DNA of 64,000 nucleotides, from the IMG/VR virus record IMGVR_UViG_3300044797_000098, positions 248,001-312,000 of that record; one strand, given 5' to 3'. The notes beneath the pieces were generated by a model that ran no database searches, had not been told where the DNA came from, and saw only the letters and a list, made by a program, of their open reading frames with translations. Of the stretch, positions 2,307 to 63,525 are shown in pieces; within the stretch, counting starts at the first letter, position 1; each line of letters starts with the position of its first letter. A program made the translations under genes and the position numbers.

Positions 2307-3008
2307 TTACCTATTCATTATCACTACTGGCAATGTTATCGTTGAATTGGAATTACCTACATTTATCTTCTGTGTCGTTTCTAATATTTTCTTTGTTGCC
2401 GTATCTGTTTTTGTAAGTTTAATTATATATGAACCGGGTTTTAATTGTGCTTGCCATTTACCTACTGCATTAGTTTTAGTTTTATGAACTTCATTGCCGG
2501 CTTCATCATTTATTAAAACACTGGCCATAAACATATCCTTACCGGTATTATCTGACACTCTCTGAATTACTGAAACTTTTTTGTTTCCTGTGGATGCTGG
2601 TGGCTGTGGCACTTTCTCTGACGATTGATTAGGAACTGCTAAAACCGCTGGCTGTTGAACCTGTGCTGCTACACCAGCACGATCAATACGACGCTTACTA
2701 ATATCGATCTCTGTCGCTTCTGTTATTTGATGCTCATTAGATATTTTAATGACTTTTGGTTCTTCTTCATCATCAGCATCTTGCTGTGCTAACTGTGATT
2801 GTCGATATTCTTTTTGTAATTCATCTATATATGCGAAGATTTTATTTGTTTTATCTGCTATCAGTTTCAATAGCATATCTTGATTAAAAACAAGTTTCTG
2901 CAAAACATCTACTTTGCTTTCTAATGCAAGTATAATATCTGATGCTTTACGAGGTTCTGGTTCGTAAGCATAACCGTCAGTATTAAATTGTTCTGTATTA
3001 TTTGACAT
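2307..3008 (-). CDS. hypothetical protein, N-terminal coiled coil and C-terminal beta-sandwich-like domain
   Basis: 233 aa; C-terminal KTKTNAVGKWQAQLKPGSYIIKL resembles prealbumin-like folds (weak). Confidence 0.6.
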   Translation of the reverse strand: MSNNTEQFNTDGYAYEPEPRKASDIILALESKVDVLQKLVFNQDMLLKLIADKTNKIFAYIDELQKEYRQSQLAQQDADDEEEPKVIKISNEHQITEATEIDISKRRIDRAGVAAQVQQPAVLAVPNQSSEKVPQPPASTGNKKVSVIQRVSDNTGKDMFMASVLINDEAGNEVHKTKTNAVGKWQAQLKPGSYIIKLTKTDTATKKILETTQKINVGNSNSTITLPVVIMNR

Positions 3009-3556
3009 TATTGCCTATCTATAAAAATACCTACATTAATTCCAACGCGTTTCAATACTACTATATCATCAACTTTAACTTCTTCTTGGAAACTTTCATT
3101 TTCACCATACAAAATAGTCCTTGCTATACTTTCTACCTGTTGTATTGAGCCAGTATGAACAATTTTTCCTGATACAAGCAAAATATATTCTCCGACTTTT
3201 GGCTGACCTTGAACCGATTGTTCTTCCTGCGTAGTATTTTCTTCTTCTGCCGGTATTACTTTTGCTACTATATTTGGTGGCGGAAAAACATAATCATTAT
3301 TATCTATAATGTGTCCCTGTTCGACTGTTATTTCATTTCCATTATCATCAAAAATCCTGCCATCAACGGATGAAAAATCCGGATTATCTATTTTTTTCGA
3401 AGATTTCACCAATGGAACGGTTTTTCTTGGCATTTGTATTGGCTGTTTTCCTAATCGAACCCATTCAGGCTCATAAGCCTGATATTCAGGCTTATTATTC
3501 CTATTAGGATTTCTGATTATATCATCTTTATCCGACATCTTCTGTCCTCTTTGCAT
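3008..3556 (-). CDS. hypothetical protein
   Basis: 182-aa ORF in operon. Confidence 0.65.
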   Translation of the reverse strand: MQRGQKMSDKDDIIRNPNRNNKPEYQAYEPEWVRLGKQPIQMPRKTVPLVKSSKKIDNPDFSSVDGRIFDDNGNEITVEQGHIIDNNDYVFPPPNIVAKVIPAEEENTTQEEQSVQGQPKVGEYILLVSGKIVHTGSIQQVESIARTILYGENESFQEEVKVDDIVVLKRVGINVGIFIDRQ

Positions 3557-3911
3557 CTCGTTCTTGACGACGCTTTTGTTTTTTTGCTTCTTTCTTTATC
3601 TTTTCTTTTTCATATTCTCCGGAAGCAATTTTTTCTGCTTTGATTTTTTCTTCATATAAACGCTGCATTGTTTCTGCGTGCTTGCGACGTTTTTTGACGC
3701 TGGGTTTCTCATAACCCTGTTTCTCTTTATATTTAGCAAGAACACCGTCTGCTTGAACAAGCGAGCGGAATGTTTTGAATGCTCGATCGAAGTTATTTCC
3801 ATATACTTCGACTTGGAGCGGTTTAAGGTATTCCCAATCGAACTCAGGTGATGTTTCTTTTTTTAATGTTGTTGTTTCTTTTTTTGAGTATTTTTTATTT
3901 ATTTTCTTCAT
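3528..3911 (-). CDS. rpsU: ribosomal protein bS21 homologue with N- and C-terminal extensions
   Basis: VEVYGNNFDRAFKTFRSLVQADGVLAKYKEKQGYEKPSVKKRRK matches the bS21 core. Confidence 0.85.
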   Translation of the reverse strand: MKKINKKYSKKETTTLKKETSPEFDWEYLKPLQVEVYGNNFDRAFKTFRSLVQADGVLAKYKEKQGYEKPSVKKRRKHAETMQRLYEEKIKAEKIASGEYEKEKIKKEAKKQKRRQERDAKRTEDVG

Positions 3912-35896: not shown

Positions 35897-36463
35897 TTAT
35901 TTTAATTTTGATTTGGCTTCTGCCTCTTCAATGAATGACTTATATTTAGATGCATCAACATTATGTTTTTTAGCACATTGTCTTGCATGAACCTTTGCAT
36001 GAGCGGGGGATGATGCTAAACGATTATCTTTGCATACGGGACATTTTACGAATGCGTCTTCGTTGTCTGCATATTTTTCGAGCAGTATTTCTAATGATGA
36101 TTTCTTTTTCTTCTTTTCTAAATCTTTTATTTTGATGCCCGGATATTCACTATGAACTTTTCTAACCACTGTATTTTGCAACTCTTTAAGGCTTCCTGAC
36201 CACCATTCAGGTGCTGAACTATATTGATGCACGCGCGCTATCGCATTTGCTCCCTGCGCTTCTGAATTGACCGGAAAATGCTGAACATTTGATTTATTTT
36301 TGGGATGATTGACATCTACTGCAACTGTCCCTCTATGACGGGATTTTGCGGAGGGTTTTAGGTTTTTACTTTTCTTTTTTTCCTTTACCGCTTTCGCAAT
36401 AACTTCCAATGGCTGATCACACCAATATTCAAACTTTTCTGCTAATTTATTAAAATTATCCAT
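35897..36463 (-). CDS. basic hypothetical protein with C-terminal zinc finger
   Basis: CPVC...HxxxCxxxH; preceded by GAAT-N6-GTAT. Confidence 0.7.
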   Translation of the reverse strand: MDNFNKLAEKFEYWCDQPLEVIAKAVKEKKKSKNLKPSAKSRHRGTVAVDVNHPKNKSNVQHFPVNSEAQGANAIARVHQYSSAPEWWSGSLKELQNTVVRKVHSEYPGIKIKDLEKKKKKSSLEILLEKYADNEDAFVKCPVCKDNRLASSPAHAKVHARQCAKKHNVDASKYKSFIEEAEAKSKLK

Positions 36464-36610
36464 AGTATGAATATACTAATTTATTCATATATACCAGTGA
36501 GGAAGTTTTTCGTATTTATTGTTGCTTTATCATTATGTTATGGCTGTTCCTCAACTTAACCTCTGTTAATTCCAGTTTTATCCTCGAATGGTAAATCCGT
36601 TCAAACCAAT

Positions 36611-37114
36611 GTGTATATAGATCATAGTTTTTCTATATCCGAAGAAACTGATATAACTAATGCGTTAAAATCTTGGGAATGTTCTTTAAATTACAAAATA
36701 AGATTTAAAATATATTACAACGCACACAACGAAGATATTGACACCAGTAATAATAAGGATTTATTTATACGAAAAACTGATCAAAAAGATCCAAGAATAA
36801 TTACTGCCAATGAAAAATTACAACAAGGCGATGATAGAAAGGATAGGTTTGTTGTTGGATTATTTTTAATTGGAACCGATCATCCAAGTGTTATATTATT
36901 AAGTATGGATAGAATTAATTCTGATTTGTGGCAGATCACTGCGCATGAGGCAGGACATTTTTTAACTGGAAGCAGTCATTCTGATGACAAAAATAGTATT
37001 ATGTATAGATTTGCCGATCTTGCATCGAAAGATATAACCGAACTCGATGTAAAAAAGGCCTGTTCTATTTATGAATTTAATTGTAATGATATGAAAGTAT
37101 GTAATATTAAATGA
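36611..37114 (+). CDS. matrixin/M10-like zinc metalloprotease
   Basis: AHEAGHFLTGSSHSDDKNSIMY (HExxH...H plus Met-turn). Confidence 0.8.
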   Translation: MYIDHSFSISEETDITNALKSWECSLNYKIRFKIYYNAHNEDIDTSNNKDLFIRKTDQKDPRIITANEKLQQGDDRKDRFVVGLFLIGTDHPSVILLSMDRINSDLWQITAHEAGHFLTGSSHSDDKNSIMYRFADLASKDITELDVKKACSIYEFNCNDMKVCNIK

Positions 37115-37836
37115 AAATAAAACTATATTACTTTTTCCGTTTCATAACATTATTATTTCTCATATTCATAACGATTTGCGCAATTCAATCATTCATTCCG
37201 AAAAGCCTATCAAACGATACACCACAACCAATTATTGAACATACGCAAACATTATTAACATCACAACCAAAAGAACCCATTTATATTACATCTATTATTT
37301 TAATAGACCCAGTATTCTCAAAAATTGAGATCGATACAATAAAAGATGCTTTGGATCGATGGGTGTATGCTACAAATGGAATAATAAATATCACCTACGA
37401 AGTCGGTTATTATCCCAATATGAAAATAAAATTGCGTAAAAACTCATTATTAAATATAATCAGAATTAAACCAACAAACGAAAATAATCCATTAATTAAT
37501 CGAATTGAGGCATTATTGCAAGTGCCTATTGTTGGATACGCAGACATTGACAACGAAACCAATCAGGATATCACAACAATTTATATAGTTAATGGAAACA
37601 TTGACAACATTGAGGAATATAAAACAACCGTGCAACACGAGTTCGCACATGCTGGTTTAAAAATGCTTCATCTTCGCGATTATTCTCTTATGGTGCCGGG
37701 CGCAGATTTTGCCTCATCATATATAACGCAAACGGATTTAAAATACTTTTGTTATTTATATAACTGCGATGCTGAACAATTAAATCCGTATGATCCCGCC
37801 CCGATCTGTTCCGACACAACATTTCATTTGTTTTAA
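37111..37836 (+). CDS. membrane-anchored matrixin-like metalloprotease
   Basis: N-terminal TM helix; QHEFAHAGLKMLHLRDYSLMVP. Confidence 0.75.
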   Translation: MKIKLYYFFRFITLLFLIFITICAIQSFIPKSLSNDTPQPIIEHTQTLLTSQPKEPIYITSIILIDPVFSKIEIDTIKDALDRWVYATNGIINITYEVGYYPNMKIKLRKNSLLNIIRIKPTNENNPLINRIEALLQVPIVGYADIDNETNQDITTIYIVNGNIDNIEEYKTTVQHEFAHAGLKMLHLRDYSLMVPGADFASSYITQTDLKYFCYLYNCDAEQLNPYDPAPICSDTTFHLF

Positions 37837-55253: not shown

Positions 55254-57368
55254 TTATTCGTTGCGAATGTTTTTAACACGTCCGAAGGGAGGCTTAAACG
55301 TTTTATGATCGCTGGTAATTAGCCAAAGGACGTCGGTGCCTTTTGGTGGTGGTCGTGCATTAGATACTTCTGGATCGCTCAAAAAACCATCTGTCATAAT
55401 TATGATGAGATCAACCTTACCACATTGTTCTTCATATTCATTGAATACACGTGATACTTCTGTTCCACCACGACCATGCACCTTGGCCTTGACCAGATTT
55501 TCCTTATCTGCTTTGCTGATCTTTACCATTTCCGACCAGTATGGAACGCAATCCCAAGGACACAAAAACACCTCACCTTTTGTATCAATTACTTGTAATT
55601 GACTGATACCAAGTGCGATGTCATCACCTGACATTGAACCTGAGCAATCGTATGCAGCCAAGATATTAAGGAATACCTCTTGTTTTTTAGGCACATACAA
55701 TCCAGCAAACAATGGCCGGCTCTTGCATTTGTTCCAATTATTACGTCCTTTTCCTTCTCGTTTCTTTGACATCATTTGACGAACAAGATCTTCCCATTTT
55801 ATCTTTGGCTCCAATAGGTCATTTAATTCGTCGGAAAGGCCAAGTGGAACCTTGCCACCCATCTTTTTCGCCATTTCCGCAGCATCATACAACCTCTTGG
55901 CCAATTCATCTTCTGACACATCGCAATCCATGTGTTCATCCAAAAGATCACCGGTTCCGAATGGATCTATATATTCACTATCTCCGCCACCACATTCGGG
56001 ACAACCATTACCGCATGTTCCACATGATCCTTCTTGATCGCCACTGCAATTACCTTCTTGTCCTTGCCCTTGTCCTTGTCCTTGTCCTTGTCCTTGGCCT
56101 TGGCCTTGTTCCTCACCATCGCAACAAGCCCCACCTTCCCCTTCGCCCGGTTCTTGCCCATTGCTGGCATCAGATTGCCCGCCAGAGCCATTTTCGCTCT
56201 GTTCTTGACCTTCCCCTTTGCCCTGACCTTTGGTATTTTGAGGATTATCACATTGACCCTCATGCTCACAACTATCTCCATGATCAGAATGATCATGTTG
56301 ATCGTCTTTCTGACCCTTCATGTTTTTGCCAGCATGAGATCCTTTACCACCGGTTTTTGATGGCTTACTACCTTTGCTACCAGCACCGGGGTTAGTCTGA
56401 TTATCTTGTTCTTTTCCATCACCAGCAGATTGCTTATTACCTTCTGCCTTTGCTTTCTCTTCTGCGTCTTTCTTTTGTTGCTCTTGGATTTGTTTTTGAA
56501 GTTTCTTGTATTCGTCGGGCTTCTTATACATTCCAAGTTTTCCACATTTTGGACATTTTGGAATACACGAATATAGATATGCATAGATATTTTCTGGTTT
56601 CAGCATATCTCCTTCGAGTTTTTCTTCTGCGTAATACATTGGTGGCTTATCATCACCGGGATGCTTATATGCAGGATCGGCTTTTTCACGAAGAGCATGA
56701 ATTGGATTGAAGTGAGCAAGATGCTCTGGCGGATTAAAAGGATCCCTATACATTTGGGCAAGTTCTTCGAGAGTAATGAAGTCTCCAAGACCTTCTTTAA
56801 AATCCTTTATGTAATCTTTACGACCACGAGTTTTTAGATCCATCAATGCAACGTGATTAACTTTGAAGTCAATTGCAATGTTATATAGGCGTGGAAGACG
56901 CGAACCACGTCGGGAAGGATGCATTGCAAAAGCATGGAGGGCCTCATGTATCAAAACCAATCTCAATCCAAGTTTTGACATCTTATTCACGAAGTCTGGT
57001 GCCCAGAAAAACTGGCGACCATTGGTCGCAGCGGTCCTCAATACTTTGCCTTTCATATGGCTTTTATACTTTTTTACTTCATCAGATATTTGATCTTTTT
57101 CTTCTTTTGTTAATTCTTGGCCATCAGCAAGTTTTTTCTCGATTTCTTTTTGGCTTTTCTCAAAATCATCAAGTTGAACCCCCATCGCATCGCATATATG
57201 CGGAAGAGGGAACACTAAATTGAAAATGAAAGGGTCACCACCTAAATTAGTTCCTAACGCCCTATTGTCATAACCTAATGACAATTCGGTAAAAACCGAG
57301 GATAATTTTTCCTCCGCTTGTTTAACCAATTTAGGATCACATTTGCCAATGACTTTGCTAAACTTCAT
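55254..57368 (-). CDS. DUF2201-type metallopeptidase + VWA domain protein (MoxR partner)
   Basis: TAATNG, HEALH, YDCSGS (MIDAS), GRGGT, TDG; central low-complexity insert. Confidence 0.9.
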   Translation of the reverse strand: MKFSKVIGKCDPKLVKQAEEKLSSVFTELSLGYDNRALGTNLGGDPFIFNLVFPLPHICDAMGVQLDDFEKSQKEIEKKLADGQELTKEEKDQISDEVKKYKSHMKGKVLRTAATNGRQFFWAPDFVNKMSKLGLRLVLIHEALHAFAMHPSRRGSRLPRLYNIAIDFKVNHVALMDLKTRGRKDYIKDFKEGLGDFITLEELAQMYRDPFNPPEHLAHFNPIHALREKADPAYKHPGDDKPPMYYAEEKLEGDMLKPENIYAYLYSCIPKCPKCGKLGMYKKPDEYKKLQKQIQEQQKKDAEEKAKAEGNKQSAGDGKEQDNQTNPGAGSKGSKPSKTGGKGSHAGKNMKGQKDDQHDHSDHGDSCEHEGQCDNPQNTKGQGKGEGQEQSENGSGGQSDASNGQEPGEGEGGACCDGEEQGQGQGQGQGQGQGQGQEGNCSGDQEGSCGTCGNGCPECGGGDSEYIDPFGTGDLLDEHMDCDVSEDELAKRLYDAAEMAKKMGGKVPLGLSDELNDLLEPKIKWEDLVRQMMSKKREGKGRNNWNKCKSRPLFAGLYVPKKQEVFLNILAAYDCSGSMSGDDIALGISQLQVIDTKGEVFLCPWDCVPYWSEMVKISKADKENLVKAKVHGRGGTEVSRVFNEYEEQCGKVDLIIIMTDGFLSDPEVSNARPPPKGTDVLWLITSDHKTFKPPFGRVKNIRNE
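56058..56108. repeat. 6-bp tandem repeat encoding (QG)n
   Basis: ttgtcc/ttggcc/ttgccc, about 8.5 units. Confidence 0.9.
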
Positions 57369-57509
57369 TTGTCTTCCTCTTTTTCCAATTGTTTTCCCAC
57401 ATTGAAACTACATTATATCCGAATGATTTTAAGTGTTCTTCTCGTTCAACAGTCTGGTTATATAACACACGATATTGCGTTTTATTTGCCTTATTCATCA
57501 TCTTATCAC
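57358..57509 (-). pseudogene. 3' part of the gene interrupted by the IS (Vsr-like tail)
   Basis: ...DKMMNKANKTQYRVLYNQTVEREEHLKSFGYNVVSMWENNWKKRKTNEV*; in frame with 59085-58797 after IS removal. Confidence 0.7.
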
Positions 57510-57584
57510 AAGGATACCGTCGCCTTTAGGCGACGGAGGAATTGTGCTCCGTTAAAATTGTTTTCGTTTTCTTTCACTTTTTTC

Positions 57585-57612
57585 TTGACATCTGGTAATA
57601 ATGTGTTATATT
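57585..57612 (+). promoter_or_regulatory. sigma70-type promoter of tnpB, TTGACA-N16-TATATT
   Basis: Inside the left end, 11 nt before the ATG. Confidence 0.6.
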
Positions 57613-57623
57613 AGTATTCAGTT

Positions 57624-58781
57624 ATGATCCTCTTACGAACCGTCAAAATCTTTCTCACAAACGCAAAAGAGCAACTTTTGCCTACGGCTATTGCTTATAC
57701 TAACGCTTATAACTACGCTTGTCAAGACGGTTATGACGGGAAAATAACATCAGGATACGATCTCCATAAACGAACTTATAGCACAATGCGTCAAACGCTT
57801 CCTGCTCAATTAGCCGTTTCTGCAAGAACCAAGGCAACAGAATCATTAGTTTCAATAGCAGGGCTAAAACGAAAAGGTAAAAAGACTTCGTGCCCGAAGA
57901 GCAAACTTTGCAGCATCCGTTATGATGCCCGTTCTTATTCGTTATGGTTAGAACGAAACGAAGTTTCCCTTCTCACATTGGAAGGAAGAAAACGCTTTGC
58001 GTTTTCTTTACCAGAATGTTATAGTCAATACAGAACATGGAAAAATAAATCAGCAGAATTGAAAATCTACGGTAAACAAGTAATACTAAACGTTGTATTC
58101 GAAAAAGAGATTACAGACACAGAACCAAACGGTAGAATCATAGGTTGCGATAGAGGTGAAAACAATTTAGCCGTTTTGTCAAACGGTAAGTTTTTCGGTG
58201 GCAGAAAAATCAAACAGAAAGCGAGACAGTATAGGAAGTTGAGAACAGAGTTGCAAAAGAAAGGCACGCGTTCAGCAAAAAGACACCTTCGGAAAATACG
58301 ATCGAAGGAGAGACGGTTCAGGGCTGACGTTAACCATTGCATATCGAAACAGATAGTAGCACTTTTGCAAACTGGTGATACGGTTGTATTAGAGAAACTA
58401 ACGGATATTAGAAAGAATATGAAACGGAAAAAGAAACATATGGCAGACGCTCATTCGTGGTCTTTCTATCAGTTAGAACAGTTTCTCATATACAAGGCGA
58501 TGGCAAAAGGTATAAACGTTGTTTTTATAGACGGAAGATATACCAGCCAATCGTGCAGTAAATGTGGCAATATAAGAAAAGCAAACAGAAAAGGAAGCAG
58601 ATTTAATTGCAGAGAATGCGGTTATACTTGCGATGCCGATCTGAATGCGTCTTTCAACATTGCTCAAAAATATCAAGCGGGGCTTCGCCCCGCTGGATCG
58701 GGCTCAGTCAATAGTCCTAACGGAAGCAATTCCAATGTATCGTCAACGGCAACGTTGGCAGATACAAGCCCTTGCCTTTAG
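57624..58781 (+). CDS. tnpB: RNA-guided endonuclease TnpB
   Basis: RuvC GCDRGE, VVLEKL, DADLNAS; zinc finger CSKC...CREC. Confidence 0.95.
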   Translation: MILLRTVKIFLTNAKEQLLPTAIAYTNAYNYACQDGYDGKITSGYDLHKRTYSTMRQTLPAQLAVSARTKATESLVSIAGLKRKGKKTSCPKSKLCSIRYDARSYSLWLERNEVSLLTLEGRKRFAFSLPECYSQYRTWKNKSAELKIYGKQVILNVVFEKEITDTEPNGRIIGCDRGENNLAVLSNGKFFGGRKIKQKARQYRKLRTELQKKGTRSAKRHLRKIRSKERRFRADVNHCISKQIVALLQTGDTVVLEKLTDIRKNMKRKKKHMADAHSWSFYQLEQFLIYKAMAKGINVVFIDGRYTSQSCSKCGNIRKANRKGSRFNCRECGYTCDADLNASFNIAQKYQAGLRPAGSGSVNSPNGSNSNVSSTATLADTSPCL

Positions 58782-58816
58782 GCAAGGGTAGTTGACCTTC
58801 TACATATTTCCATTCT
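58620..58816 (+). ncRNA. predicted TnpB reRNA (omega RNA) with flank-derived guide; 5' limit approximate
   Basis: Established TnpB architecture: the RNA overlaps the tnpB 3' end and right end, and the guide starts at 58797. Confidence 0.55.
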
Positions 58817-59085
58817 TCTTCATCTGAAACTTGTGCCCAAGTTTTTGCAAACTTCAATCCACCGGGGCAATAACCATTATCAGCAACAACGCGTTGTGCG
58901 AAGTCAATATAATCATTCAAGTCAAGATCATCAAAATAATCCCTACCCCAAAAATCAAGTATATCGTCTCGTGTCATTCCTTCGATGACCATAGCGATTA
59001 TTTGATTGATTGTAATGCGATGACCGGGGAGGCAGGGCTTGCCTCCACAACGGTCATCATCAATTTCGAATGAGATTGCTCTCAT
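58797..59085 (-). pseudogene. DUF433-domain gene, 5' part, interrupted by the IS
   Basis: DDRCGGKPCLPGHRITI...GMTRDDIL; the ORF-track tail QLPLPKGKG is IS right-end sequence. Confidence 0.75.
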
Positions 59086-60215
59086 CCACCGCTCTTCATT
59101 CGCCCTGAAAGATCTTTGAGAATGGCATCAAACTCTGGCGATTGATCAAGATCCATATCAACCGTTCGTTCAAGACCAATTTGGCTTCGGATGCTAACCA
59201 ATGCCAACTCTGGATCAACTTTTCGAAGGAAACTTGCAACCGTTTCTGTTTCCTTTGGAAGTTCCCTGTCCTTCTTCTTGGTTTTATTCTTTTCCGCATT
59301 TTCGTCAAGCAAACGAGCCAATCGATTGCAAACAATCATGCATGCAACGCAACGCTTGCTTGGTTCAAGATCATCAAAACCTTTGATGTTTTCGCCTCGC
59401 ATGATCTTCTCAACGATTGGCAAAAGCACCTGATAGTGATCAAAATACGCAGCATATTTGATACCAACTTTTCGACCAACGCAACCAGATGCTTTGTTGG
59501 TTAAGATACCATGAGACCAATTGTGTTTCTCACCGAATGTAAGAATGTTGGAATAATTATGCCATCCGCGTGGTGAAGGGTCTGCATAAACATCGCCGGG
59601 ATCTGTATCTCCAAAAAGATCTTCTCCGTGATCAGCAAGATATGCTGTGATTGAAGCGTGGATTTGTCCTTCTTTTGCTGCCCAATCAAGCCATTGCGTT
59701 GTTGTTGCTTCAACAAGATACTTCTCTGCACGGTCAAGCAATGGAAGTGGCGGACGCGAACCACCTTCATTCGGAAGGTTTCCTGCCATTAGGACTGCTT
59801 GTAGATTAGGAAGGGTGCGACCATTGATCGTGTGGAATTGTGTGAATTCAAGTAATGGTGCAATGACGCTATGATCCATTTTATCGATTTCATCGAAGAA
59901 AACGACGACTTTTTCGTTGCCCTTCATTAGGGTTTCGTAGTAATATGGAAGCAGAAACTTAATAAACTCTGCTTCTTTCACATCCATAATTTTTGGGAAA
60001 CCGCCTGCATCAGTTCGTTCGAATGTGCTGGCATTTAGATACAACATCGAAAAACCAGAGTTTTTGATCGAACTCTTTCCGATTGCTGATTTACCACTAC
60101 CCCTTCGGGCACAAGAGAAAATATTACCACCGTATTGGATAGTGGCTGCGGTTATTTCAGACAATTCCTTGGTGTTAATCCGTTGCATATTAAAATCTGA
60201 TGATACTGCTGTCAT
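59082..60215 (-). CDS. MoxR-type AAA+ ATPase
   Basis: RRGSGKS Walker A, FFDEID Walker B, MAGN, PLLDR, PSPRGW. Confidence 0.88.
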   Translation of the reverse strand: MTAVSSDFNMQRINTKELSEITAATIQYGGNIFSCARRGSGKSAIGKSSIKNSGFSMLYLNASTFERTDAGGFPKIMDVKEAEFIKFLLPYYYETLMKGNEKVVVFFDEIDKMDHSVIAPLLEFTQFHTINGRTLPNLQAVLMAGNLPNEGGSRPPLPLLDRAEKYLVEATTTQWLDWAAKEGQIHASITAYLADHGEDLFGDTDPGDVYADPSPRGWHNYSNILTFGEKHNWSHGILTNKASGCVGRKVGIKYAAYFDHYQVLLPIVEKIMRGENIKGFDDLEPSKRCVACMIVCNRLARLLDENAEKNKTKKKDRELPKETETVASFLRKVDPELALVSIRSQIGLERTVDMDLDQSPEFDAILKDLSGRMKSGG

Positions 60216-62079: not shown

Positions 62080-62742
62080 TTAGATATCGATTACTCTCAC
62101 TGGATTGACAACTTCGTATTTGGCATTCAAAATTGCACAATTAGCGAATACGATATCGTTAATTACTTTAACCCCGCTGCTTGGATGACAATGCCCGAAA
62201 AGATGAGCCTTCAATGATTTTAATTGTTGGATGCGTTTTGCAAGCATTTCGCATCCGATATTACGAATAATCTCTTCTCCAAACCAAACCTCTCCTGTTG
62301 GAACCCGATCGAGAATGTCATATGGCGGTGAATGTGTTATGAGTATATCAACATCATTAGGGATAGCATTCCATCTTTTTGCAATATCTTCACCTCTCGA
62401 AGCCATGAACCAATACTCACCATATGCAGGTGTCCAAGGCGAACCATAAAACTTTACTCCATCAATTACATCTTCGTTATCTTCCAGATATGTGATGCCA
62501 GCATCTTGTAAGTATGCCAGAGCCGTATCACGATAGTATGATTGTGCTTGGAACCGATCATGATTACCGAATATGACATACTTCTTTTTATGAGGAAGTT
62601 CTCCCATCCATTCTGCAAAATCATTCATAATTTTTAATTGACCGCTAATGGTAATATCACCACAACACACCGCAACATCTCCATCGGGAACATCAATACC
62701 CCTATGATGTCCATGCATATCTGAAAAACTACATATTCTCAT
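62080..62742 (-). CDS. calcineurin-like metallophosphoesterase (MPPED-like)
   Basis: SDMHG, GD, GNHD, THSPP, FGHCH intact. Confidence 0.92.
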   Translation of the reverse strand: MRICSFSDMHGHHRGIDVPDGDVAVCCGDITISGQLKIMNDFAEWMGELPHKKKYVIFGNHDRFQAQSYYRDTALAYLQDAGITYLEDNEDVIDGVKFYGSPWTPAYGEYWFMASRGEDIAKRWNAIPNDVDILITHSPPYDILDRVPTGEVWFGEEIIRNIGCEMLAKRIQQLKSLKAHLFGHCHPSSGVKVINDIVFANCAILNAKYEVVNPVRVIDI

Positions 62743-63416
62743 TATACACCAAAAAACATTTTTATTTTTTCAATAATTTCATTACGAAACTCTAACGTTA
62801 TTTTTTTCCATTTTATGCGTAAAATAATCCAACCATTATCTATTAAAAATCTATCTTTCTTTTCATCTGAAAGCTTTCGTTCTAATATTTCGTGTTGTTT
62901 TCCGTCAATTTCCATCGCTAATTTTTTATCTATATTGGCAAAATCAATAAACCATTTCCCTACTTTGTATTCACGTTGATATGAAACATTAAGTTCGTCC
63001 AACATAGATATAATATATTTTTCTGGGTAGGATGGTTCTATTTTAGATCTTGATGTCCATCCAGTATGGGTTCCATTAGCCACACGTTCTTTGGCTTTAA
63101 TTGAAAGACGTTTTCTAGTTTCTGGGTTTGTAGGAGCTTGTGATTTACACTTGGTAGAGCAGTATTGTTGTGTTTTTCTATGTTTAATAACGAAGACTTT
63201 ATTACAAAATAAACAGTTTCTTTCTTGTTTTGGTTTCTGCAACGCTAATGATGTTTTTAATTTGGATGAATCTGTATGTCGTAAGTTAGAAAAATATGTA
63301 TTAGAACATCCTAATGAACATGTTGTTTTCTCTTTCGGACTACCTTGTGTAGTAGTAAATACTTTATCGCAGACTGGACAGTTTTTATTTATTAATTTAT
63401 ATTTTCTTACACCCAT
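62742..63416 (-). CDS. DUF559/Vsr-like endonuclease with N-terminal zinc ribbons (homing-type)
   Basis: SYPEK, IDFA, EIDGKQH, GW.ILRI.W; start moved to MGVRK. Confidence 0.82.
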   Translation of the reverse strand: MGVRKYKLINKNCPVCDKVFTTTQGSPKEKTTCSLGCSNTYFSNLRHTDSSKLKTSLALQKPKQERNCLFCNKVFVIKHRKTQQYCSTKCKSQAPTNPETRKRLSIKAKERVANGTHTGWTSRSKIEPSYPEKYIISMLDELNVSYQREYKVGKWFIDFANIDKKLAMEIDGKQHEILERKLSDEKKDRFLIDNGWIILRIKWKKITLEFRNEIIEKIKMFFGV

Positions 63417-63438
63417 TAATTCCAATATAGTATAAAAA

Positions 63439-63468
63439 CTCACCCAGCATTTTGACATACTGGGTGAG
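63439..63468. other. GC-rich hairpin upstream of the DUF559 gene
   Basis: CTCACCCAG...CTGGGTGAG. Confidence 0.55.
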
Positions 63469-63525
63469 CAGACCAACGAACAACACAACTAACAACGAAA
63501 GGAAACAAACAATGAAACGAACGAA

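What the first reader, a model, noticed from the sequence alone, without database searches (positions are those of the whole stretch)
57358..59085. TnpB element whose exact removal restores a gene, predicting TAM (TCAC) and guide
SEEN: twin 8-bp hairpins with TTTA loops flank tnpB. Joining TCAC (57506-57509) directly to 58797 removes 1287 bp and gives an uninterrupted 441-nt minus-strand ORF (...WKYVEG|DKMMNK...) that is translationally coupled to the VWA gene. All three RuvC acidic residues are intact and there is no tnpA in the element. KNOWN: IS200/IS605 elements insert 3' of a short target motif that serves as the TnpB TAM, and the guide comes from the DNA flanking the right end. INFERENCE: TAM 5'-TCAC, guide about CTTCTACATATTTCCATTCT. 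The nuclease should cut IS-free alleles in co-infecting relatives, a homing-like drive inside a phage operon.
Basis: partly seen in the sequence, partly recalled or inferred. Interest (0 to 1): 0.7.

Follow-up and report, generated by a model that had tools for sequence, protein, structure and literature searches.

The report
Phage TnpB insertion element, TAM corrected

Summary
The sequence facts hold. Two 8-bp hairpins with TTTA loops flank an intact 385-aa tnpB. No tnpA is present. Joining 57509 to 58797 does give a 146-aa ORF.

Two orthologous IS-free sites in the window's own genome decide the matter. A sister phage carries the element there, and the IS-free sites contain TTCAT and nothing more. 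So TTCAT (57494-57498) is the native target/TAM and the element is 57499-58796 (1298 bp). Relatives with 35-51% identical TnpB have TTCAT or a one-base variant 22-27 nt before their left hairpin.

The right border (…TTGAC|) and the guide (CTTCTACATATTTCC…) stand, give or take 2 nt.

The "restored" ORF fuses a DUF433 gene, whose homologues are 100-130 aa and never carry this tail, to the last 45 residues of a restriction-endonuclease-like domain. Correct removal ends DUF433 at …VEDE*.

No IS-free allele of this exact site was found. Homing is plausible, already proposed in the literature, and untested here.

The parts
57494..57498 (+). TTCAT: native target motif, the predicted TAM, immediately 5' of the element
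   Evidence: Outermost bases shared by seven insertion contexts. Present in two IS-free orthologous sites. Conserved 22-27 nt 5' of the left hairpin in relatives.
57499..58796 (+). The insertion element proper: 1298 bp, tnpB only, non-autonomous
   Evidence: Borders from multi-copy comparison and empty sites.
57517..57536 (+). Left-end hairpin CCGTCGCC-TTTA-GGCGACGG, followed by the conserved AGGAATTG
   Evidence: Equivalent hairpins with different stem sequences occur in relatives.
57585..57612 (+). Sigma-70-like promoter TTGACA-16-TATATT (11 of 12, with TG) upstream of tnpB
   Evidence: Similar TTGACA...TATATA boxes sit upstream of the other tnpB copies of this genome. Consensus match only.
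57624..58781 (+). tnpB, 385 aa, RuvC D176/E257/D339, zinc-finger Cys 311/314/329/332
58669..58796 (+). Predicted omega/reRNA scaffold, spanning the 3' end of tnpB and the right end
   Evidence: The fold of 58640-58816 has z = -7.1. In a 9-member family alignment, 12 of 22 pairs show compensatory changes, and a GUCAAY...RUUGAC stem is almost invariant. The same 128 nt occur as a solo copy elsewhere in the genome.
58769..58788 (+). Right-end hairpin CCCTTGCC-TTTA-GGCAAGGG
58792..58796 (+). TTGAC: last bases of the right end
   Evidence: Six right-end contexts diverge after TTGAC. Relatives end in GTTGAC or GTTGGC.
58797..58816 (+). Flank that would supply the guide (CTTCTACATATTTCCATTCT)
   Evidence: Follows from the right border plus the established TnpB mechanism. 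Four of six right-end flanks begin with CT, so the guide start is uncertain by up to 2 nt.
58797..59085 (-). DUF433 gene, native part (96 codons). As it stands the ORF runs on to 58717 through 26 element-encoded codons.
   Evidence: Pfam PF04255. Homologues of 100-130 aa.
57358..57501 (-). 47-codon ORF: remnant of the C-terminus of a restriction-endonuclease-like (MTES_1575/RAP-type) domain. Its first ATG is element DNA; the second comes from the TAM.
   Evidence: 131 library hits other than itself, in all but a few cases at or near the C-terminus of proteins of up to 649 aa. The conserved upstream block YEFYGDxWHGNP is missing. Weak Pfam hit.
55254..57368 (-). Downstream DUF2201_N metallopeptidase / VWA-like gene, with its own GAGGA upstream of the ATG
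   Evidence: Orthologues in L004 and L015 start with the same ATGAAGTTTAG after non-coding DNA.
59082..60215 (-). Upstream AAA-type ATPase gene of the same operon
   Evidence: Conserved order ATPase-DUF433-VWA in L004, L005 and L015.
58676..58694 (-). Terminator-like GC hairpin plus T-run on the operon strand, inside the element
   Evidence: Consensus match only.

Best explanation
A non-autonomous IS200/IS605-family element (tnpB only, IS1341-like), 1298 bp, 57499-58796, sits 3' of the pentamer TTCAT in a jumbo-phage operon at the very end of a DUF433 gene.

Like its characterised relatives, it should be moved by a Y1 TnpA supplied in trans. That enzyme would recognise the two subterminal hairpins, cut after TTCAT on the left and after TTGAC on the right, and leave no target duplication.

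Its TnpB has an intact RuvC triad. It should load an RNA made from the last ~130 nt of the element plus about 16-20 nt of right flank. It should then cut DNA carrying 5'-TTCAT followed by CTTCTACATATTTCC..., which is the unoccupied site.

Correct removal gives DUF433 ending ...VEDE* (98 aa), with its TAA overlapping the ATG of a 46-codon nuclease-domain remnant (ATGAATAA).

Shown here: the borders, the target motif, the intact catalytic residues, conservation of the RNA/DNA structure, and recent mobility into several sites of sister phages. Inferred: RNA expression, cleavage, and who supplies the transposase.
For: 1. Left border. TTCATCATCTTATCACAAGG... is preceded by unrelated DNA in the window, L005, L006, L007 and L024 and in two metagenome contigs. 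The flanks are GCCTTA, GATGAG, AAAACA, TGGTTG, GATAGT, CTTACC and AAGATA.

2. Empty sites. Sister-phage contigs L007 and L006 are 78-84% identical to the window's own genome at about 224-187 kb, where that genome has no element.
- Site 1: only the join flank+TTCAT|flank gives one 129-aa ORF colinear with the uninterrupted orthologue at G000 202113-201739. Keeping 0, 4, 6 or 16 nt, or trimming 2 nt at the right end, splits it. The orthologue reads TTATTCAT|GTAATAG at the aligned position.
- Site 2: the orthologue reads ...CACGCAAAACATTCAT followed by non-element DNA.

3. Family. Sixteen loci, one of them this same element (L092), have TTCAT 22-27 nt 5' of the left hairpin. Nine more have one-base variants. 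The sequence between TTCAT and the hairpin differs between lineages.

4. Right border. Six contexts diverge after TTGAC. Relatives end in GTTGAC.

5. TnpB is intact. The right-end RNA fold has z = -7.1. Twelve of 22 consensus pairs have compensatory changes.

6. The chimera. DUF433 homologues are 100-130 aa, with tails VEDEKIV* or unrelated extensions. The 47-aa ORF matches only the last ~45 residues of a nuclease domain.

7. Precedent. TTCAT and TTTAT are experimentally verified pentamer TAMs of IS200/IS605 elements (bioRxiv 10.1101/2023.03.14.532601).
Against: - No IS-free allele of this particular site was found. There were no hits in IMG/VR with a gapped flank pattern that would have matched either junction. 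There were no joints in four metagenome runs, though Logan contigs drop rare variants. IS-free relatives L004 and L015/L016 have different DNA between DUF433 and the VWA gene.
- Frame alone at sister site 1 would also allow 2, 8, 11 or 14 retained bases. Five is chosen because TTCAT is what the orthologues contain.
- The homology of the nuclease remnant starts exactly at the element border. This hints that the two present flanks may never have been contiguous.
- Expression of the RNA and nuclease activity are untested.
- No transposase source was identified.
Confidence: 0.85

Rival explanations
1. The element runs from 57510 to 58796 (1287 bp), it interrupted a single 146-aa gene, and the TAM is TCAC.
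For: The join is in frame and open for 146 codons. The junction residues VEGDKMM loosely resemble VEDEKIV* of the L004 homologue.
Against: The 16 nt ending in TCAC travel with the element into seven unrelated contexts. A reader-type border breaks the gene at the sister-phage site where both flanks are known. IS-free orthologues contain only TTCAT. No DUF433 homologue carries the nuclease-like tail. That tail is only the last ~45 residues of its domain. An in-frame join has a 1 in 3 chance, because only one frame of the left flank is open.
Confidence: 0.03
2. Same element and same TAM, but the present flanks were never neighbours. One possibility is recombination between two directly oriented copies, one in the DUF433 tail and one at an internal TTCAT of a full-length nuclease gene. 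Another is a deletion adjacent to the element. Either would have removed the DNA in between, so no simple empty site for this locus ever existed.
For: Homology of the 47-aa ORF to nuclease domains begins at the M-N encoded by the TAM, exactly at the element border. Related phages carry several copies of this element and other tnpB elements in this same intergenic hot spot. The DNA between DUF433 and the VWA gene differs in every relative. A relative has the element 18 nt deeper in the same tail, showing repeated insertion here. A solo right end elsewhere in the genome shows that deletions which truncate these elements do happen.
Against: The simple-insertion join gives a tidy DUF433 end (VEDE*, TAA overlapping ATG) that matches VEDE in L004. 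No relative with a full-length nuclease gene at this position was found.
Confidence: 0.3
3. The tnpB is domesticated by the phage rather than acting only as a selfish element. It could serve as an RNA-guided weapon or exclusion system against competing phages or host DNA, possibly using extra guides.
For: The phage keeps at least four full-length tnpB genes with intact motifs. It also holds a 100% identical solo copy of the 128-nt RNA scaffold with a different flank, and a promoter-like TTTGCA-16-TATAAT ending 14 nt upstream of it.
Against: The element has complete transposon ends and has recently inserted at several different sites in sister phages, which is typical selfish behaviour. The solo scaffold lies in a truncated gene and looks like a deletion remnant. 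The promoter match is no better than expected by chance in this AT-rich DNA (2 found against 1.5 expected). No target with a TAM was found for the solo guide in the genome.
Confidence: 0.1

Closest known systems
ISDra2 (Deinococcus radiodurans) TnpB and its reRNA, IS200/IS605 family
   Same: RuvC D-E-D plus zinc-finger TnpB. Subterminal hairpins. Insertion 3' of a pentamer (TTGAT there) that doubles as the TAM. Guide RNA from the right end and flank. Direct sequence match to PDB 8bf8/8exa/8h1j at E about 4e-5.
   Different: ISDra2 carries its own Y1 tnpA; this element has none. The TAM here is TTCAT. The proteins are only distantly related, and the best PDB matches are Cas12f-type proteins at E about 6e-23.
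ISGst2 and ISGst5 of Geobacillus stearothermophilus (Meers et al., bioRxiv 10.1101/2023.03.14.532601)
   Same: Pentamer TAMs that equal the transposon target site (TTTAT for TnpB2, TTCAT for the IscB of ISGst5). The nuclease cuts the donor joint so that the element is copied back.
   Different: The TTCAT element there encodes IscB, not TnpB. Those are chromosomal elements with TnpA; this one is in a phage genome without TnpA.
IS1341-type (tnpB-only) members of IS200/IS605 and their protein-less derivatives (PATEs)
   Same: Only tnpB between the two hairpin ends, so mobility depends on a transposase in trans. The relative L005 shows a copy with a ~470-bp internal deletion that keeps both ends.
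   Different: Nothing essential. This is why I file it as a new member of a known kind.
Free-standing homing endonucleases of T4-like phages, and 'transposon non-restorative homing' (review PMC13565253)
   Same: The proposed behaviour: cut the unoccupied allele of a co-infecting relative and be copied in by recombination.
   Different: Recognition here would be by RNA guide plus TAM. Nothing in this data set shows homing. The two related phages carry the element at positions 18 nt apart with different left flanks, and the nearest IS-free relative has CTCAT plus a mismatched target.

Membership tests
IS200/IS605 family | TnpB with a split RuvC domain (D, E, D) and a zinc-ribbon (TNB) domain | tested here: met
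   Pfam PF01385 and PF07282. D176, E257, D339 and two CxxC pairs conserved in a 12-sequence alignment and against chain 7wju_A.
IS200/IS605 family | Subterminal hairpins at both ends instead of terminal inverted repeats | tested here: met
   8-bp hairpins at 57517-57536 and 58769-58788. Relatives keep the hairpins with different stem sequences.
IS200/IS605 family | Insertion 3' of a conserved 4-5 nt target, without target-site duplication | tested here: met
   TTCAT is present in two IS-free orthologous sites. At the site with both flanks, flank+TTCAT|flank restores the gene with no duplicated bases. Tested on sister-phage copies of the same element, not on the window copy itself.
IS200/IS605 family | Y1 (HUH) transposase TnpA | tested here: not met
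   No room for it in 1298 bp. No PF01797 match in the 406-kb record at E <= 1, while the search's named control genomes did give matches. This makes the element non-autonomous (IS1341-like), which is a recognised subgroup.
TnpB/OMEGA RNA-guided nuclease | Structured RNA from the 3' end of tnpB and the right end, continuing into the flank as a guide | tested here: inconclusive
   Stable fold (z = -7.1) and covariation (12 of 22 pairs) fit. However, the terminal hairpin is also a DNA signal for the transposase, and no RNA data exist, because all runs holding the sequence are DNA. No Rfam family reached its threshold.
TnpB/OMEGA RNA-guided nuclease | TAM-dependent, guide-dependent DNA cleavage | not testable with these tools
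   Needs a plasmid-interference or TAM-depletion assay.
Homing element (copying into the unoccupied allele of a co-infecting genome) | The same junction in different genomes together with cleavable IS-free alleles | tested here: not met
   The only other occupied DUF433 tail (L005) has the element 18 nt away with a different left flank. IS-free relatives lack a matching target. No IS-free allele was seen in reads or IMG/VR. Absence in this small sample does not exclude homing.

The most novel reading that the evidence does not exclude
The jumbo phage may use its tnpB elements as RNA-guided nucleases in phage-phage competition or homing. The 100% identical solo RNA scaffold at G000 372198-372325 would then supply a second, transposon-independent guide to the window's TnpB. 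That would be a natural intermediate between a transposon nuclease and a multi-guide, CRISPR-like system.
Probability: 0.1. Interest if true: 0.7.

Novelty: new member of a known kind. Interest (0 to 1): 0.3.

Why it matters
The practical output is a corrected, testable prediction for a compact (385-aa) phage-borne TnpB. The TAM is 5'-TTCAT, the scaffold is about 58669-58796, and the guide starts at 58797.

It also shows a reliable way to call the borders of such elements. Independent copies and orthologous empty sites work; a single in-frame join can mislead.

Biologically, it documents a tnpB-only element that has recently inserted at several sites in sister jumbo phages from peat, although the phage itself has no transposase. 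That raises the question of who mobilises it.

Tried and rejected
- IS-free allele of the window site. A gapped flank pattern in IMG/VR that would catch either junction gave 0 hits. Laying four metagenome runs gave no joints. A metagenome scan with the DUF433 alignment found only relatives with different DNA downstream.
- Homologues of the small membrane-protein gene next to the second element, to test whether its ATG (the TAM) is native: none beyond the genome itself.
- Rfam: only a sub-threshold HEARO match on the wrong strand (25.5 bits against a gathering score of 83). Treated as noise.
- Self-targets: no site in the genome matches any of four guides within 2 mismatches next to TTCAT.
- A near-identical copy in a cellular genome, which could have named a host or a TnpA donor: the closest matches in species-representative genomes are only about 40% identical TnpBs, mostly in methanogen MAGs.
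- Using the DUF433 tail of L004 to choose between the joins: both joins look passable, so I do not lean on it.
Full report
**What is in the sequence**

The window is bases 248001-312000 of a 406,470-bp IMG/VR virus record, estimated 95% complete.

At 57624-58781 (+) lies a 385-aa ORF with Pfam OrfB_IS605 and Cas12f1-like_TNB domains. It is flanked by two perfect 8-bp hairpins with TTTA loops, at 57517-57536 and 58769-58788. A scan of the whole genome for hairpins of this type finds seven, six of them at tnpB-element ends.

The RuvC residues D176, E257 and D339 and two CxxC pairs are present. They are conserved in an alignment with three paralogues and eight relatives. E257 and D339 align to E324 and D401 of chain 7wju_A.

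There is no second gene in the element. No Y1 transposase match exists anywhere in the record, although the same search gave matches in its named control genomes.

Joining 57509 to 58797 removes 1287 bp and gives a 146-aa minus-strand ORF. Its stop overlaps the ATG of the downstream DUF2201/VWA gene by 11 nt.

**Where the left end really is**

The genome and related contigs hold further copies of this same element, 96-100% identical. In every case the left hairpin is preceded by the same TTCATCATCTTATCACAAGGATA. To the left of TTCAT the DNA is unrelated:
- the window: GCCTTA
- L005: GATGAG
- L006: AAAACA
- L007: TGGTTG
- L024: GATAGT
- two contigs from metagenome runs: CTTACC and AAGATA

A divergent second element in the same genome (TnpB 38% identical) has GGATTA|TTCATCATCTT....

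**Empty sites**

Two contigs of a sister phage, L007 and L006 (IMG/VR sample 3300049215), are 78-84% identical to the window's own genome at about 224-187 kb. That genome has no element there. The end of L007 (left end) and the start of L006 (right end) are the two sides of one insertion.

I joined the flanks in six ways. Only flank+TTCAT joined to the base after TTGAC gives a single 129-aa cysteine-rich ORF. That ORF is colinear on both sides of the junction with the uninterrupted orthologue at G000 202113-201739.

At the aligned position the orthologue reads TTATTCAT|GTAATAG. At a second insertion, the left flank ...CACGAAAAACATTCAT| matches G000 ...CACGCAAAACATTCAT, which is followed by ordinary genome sequence.

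TTCAT is therefore native DNA, and the element starts with CATCTTATCAC.... Frame alone would also allow 2, 8, 11 or 14 retained bases. Five is what the orthologues actually contain.

**Family level**

Relatives with 35-51% identical TnpB from viral contigs and from archaeal and bacterial MAGs share the architecture TTCAT, then about 18 variable bases, then a hairpin, then AGGA.
- Sixteen loci, one of them this same element (L092), have TTCAT 22-27 nt before the hairpin foot.
- Nine more have a one-base variant there (CTCAT, ATCAT, GTCAT, TTCAC and similar).
- TTCAT is the commonest pentamer in that stretch.
- Their right ends read ACAAG, hairpin, TA(G/A)TTGAC.

TTCAT and TTTAT are experimentally verified pentamer TAMs of other IS200/IS605 elements (bioRxiv 10.1101/2023.03.14.532601).

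**The right end and the guide**

Six right-end contexts share everything up to TTGAC and then diverge.

Four of the six flanks begin with CT, which I cannot explain. It leaves up to 2 nt of doubt about the first guide base.

The region 58640-58816 folds much better than shuffles (z = -7.1). In a nine-member family alignment, 12 of 22 consensus pairs show compensatory changes. A nearly invariant GUCAAY...RUUGAC stem ties the element's last bases to an upstream block. A strong promoter-like site (TTGACA-16-TATATT) lies upstream of tnpB.

**Why the 'restored gene' is not a gene**

The N-terminal 96 codons are a DUF433 protein. Its homologues are 100-130 aa. They end ...VEDEKIV*, or carry an unrelated extension, or (P0004) run into the same element.

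The 47-codon ORF on the other side matches 131 other proteins in a 1.8-billion-protein library. In all but a few cases the match lies at or near the C-terminus of proteins of up to 649 aa. In the alignment the upstream conserved block (VDG...YEFYGDxWHGNP) is missing from the window. It is a gene remnant.

With the correct join (removing 57499-58796, 1298 bp), DUF433 is 98 aa and ends ...WKYVEDE*. Its TAA overlaps the ATG of the remnant (ATGAATAA). As the genome stands, DUF433 keeps its 96 native codons and gains 26 element-encoded ones.

**History of this locus**

I could not find an IS-free allele of this exact site. The stretch between DUF433 and the VWA gene differs in every relative:
- a 69-codon ORF in L004
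- a terminator-like stem-loop and a promoter-like TTGACA (read by eye, no scan) in L015
- this element plus a second, oppositely oriented tnpB element in L005

In L005 the element sits 18 nt deeper in the DUF433 tail, so that insertion is independent. The remnant's homology starts exactly at the element border. I therefore give about 0.3 to the possibility that the two present flanks were joined by recombination between two copies, or by an adjacent deletion, and were never contiguous.

**Mechanism and comparison with known systems**

The element meets the tested defining features of IS200/IS605, except that it lacks TnpA. This places it with the tnpB-only, non-autonomous members.

Its recent appearance at several new sites in sister phages argues that a transposase acts on it in trans. 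Homing can only copy into homologous sites.

Nothing here demonstrates it. The nearest IS-free relative has CTCAT and a target with many mismatches to the guide.

**Verdict**

This is a real and well-formed TnpB element: a new member of a known kind. The right end and guide are correct. The TAM and the 'restored gene' are wrong.

Corrected prediction: TAM 5'-TTCAT, element 57499-58796, guide from 58797.

Noticed in passing
outside the window: G000 372198-372325 (L002 1501-1628): A solo copy of the last 128 nt of the element (the whole predicted RNA scaffold), 100% identical, with no tnpB and no left end. It is followed by a different flank (CTCAATTGGAGATG...). It sits inside the truncated fifth member of a tandem array of ~95-aa paralogous genes. 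A promoter-like TTTGCA-16-TATAAT ends 14 nt upstream. It could give the window's TnpB a second guide, or it could be a plain deletion remnant.
   Followed up: partly
outside the window: G000 1-1350, 2587-3844, 36100-37370, 406340-406470: The phage holds at least four full-length tnpB genes (32-42% identical to the window's), each with its own hairpin ends. The record starts exactly at the last base of one element's right end and stops just after another element's left end and promoter. The assembly therefore broke in these repeats, and the missing ~5% probably lies there.
   Followed up: partly
57491-57501 and G000 2584-2594: Both the window's element and the divergent second element are inserted at TTATTCAT, the reverse complement of ATGAATAA. 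The CAT of the TAM is the start codon of the next minus-strand ORF. The first three bases of the element add a second in-frame ATG. Two of eight sites could be chance.
   Followed up: partly
58797-58798 and the right flanks in L002, L005, L006: Four of six right-end flanks begin with CT. Most relatives' left ends also begin with CT straight after TTCAT. This may be a weak preference for the bases 3' of the cut, or a 2-nt uncertainty in the right border.
   Followed up: no
L005 5262-6080 (relative, JGI 3300049215): A copy of the same element with a ~470-bp internal deletion that removes the promoter -10 box and about 149 N-terminal codons of tnpB but keeps both ends. A second tnpB element, like the one at G000 36 kb, faces it a few hundred bases away.
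   Followed up: partly
58676-58694 (-) and 57697-57725 (-): On the operon strand the element carries a terminator-like GC hairpin with a T-run and, further on, a promoter-like TTGACA-17-TAGTAT pointing out through the left end toward the VWA gene. The insertion may therefore be polar but self-compensating.
   Followed up: no
55254-57368 (-): PHROGs labels the matching family 'HNH endonuclease' (phrog_1314). Pfam finds a DUF2201_N metallopeptidase domain plus a VWA-like DUF2201 domain and no HNH. The PHROG name looks misleading.
   Followed up: no
62742-63488 (-) and 57358-57501 (-): The neighbourhood holds other selfish-nuclease material: an HNH/homing-endonuclease-like gene (PHROG hits) and the nuclease-domain remnant. 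The relative L005 has a weak GIY-YIG/NUMOD3 gene nearby.
   Followed up: no
loci L026-L045 and L079-L083: The closest cellular relatives of this TnpB (about 40% identity) are mostly in methanogen MAGs (Methanothrix, Methanoculleus, Methanolinea). Two 'genome' contigs (L028, L029) have the same length and range as IMG/VR viral contigs (L083, L082), so some of these MAG contigs are probably viral.
   Followed up: no
metagenome runs X2-X22: About twenty rhizosphere metagenomes from 2019 hold only the element (about 98-99% identical), with other flanks (...AAGATA|TTCAT and TTGAC|ATACGCC). The element therefore circulates beyond the peat phages.
   Followed up: no
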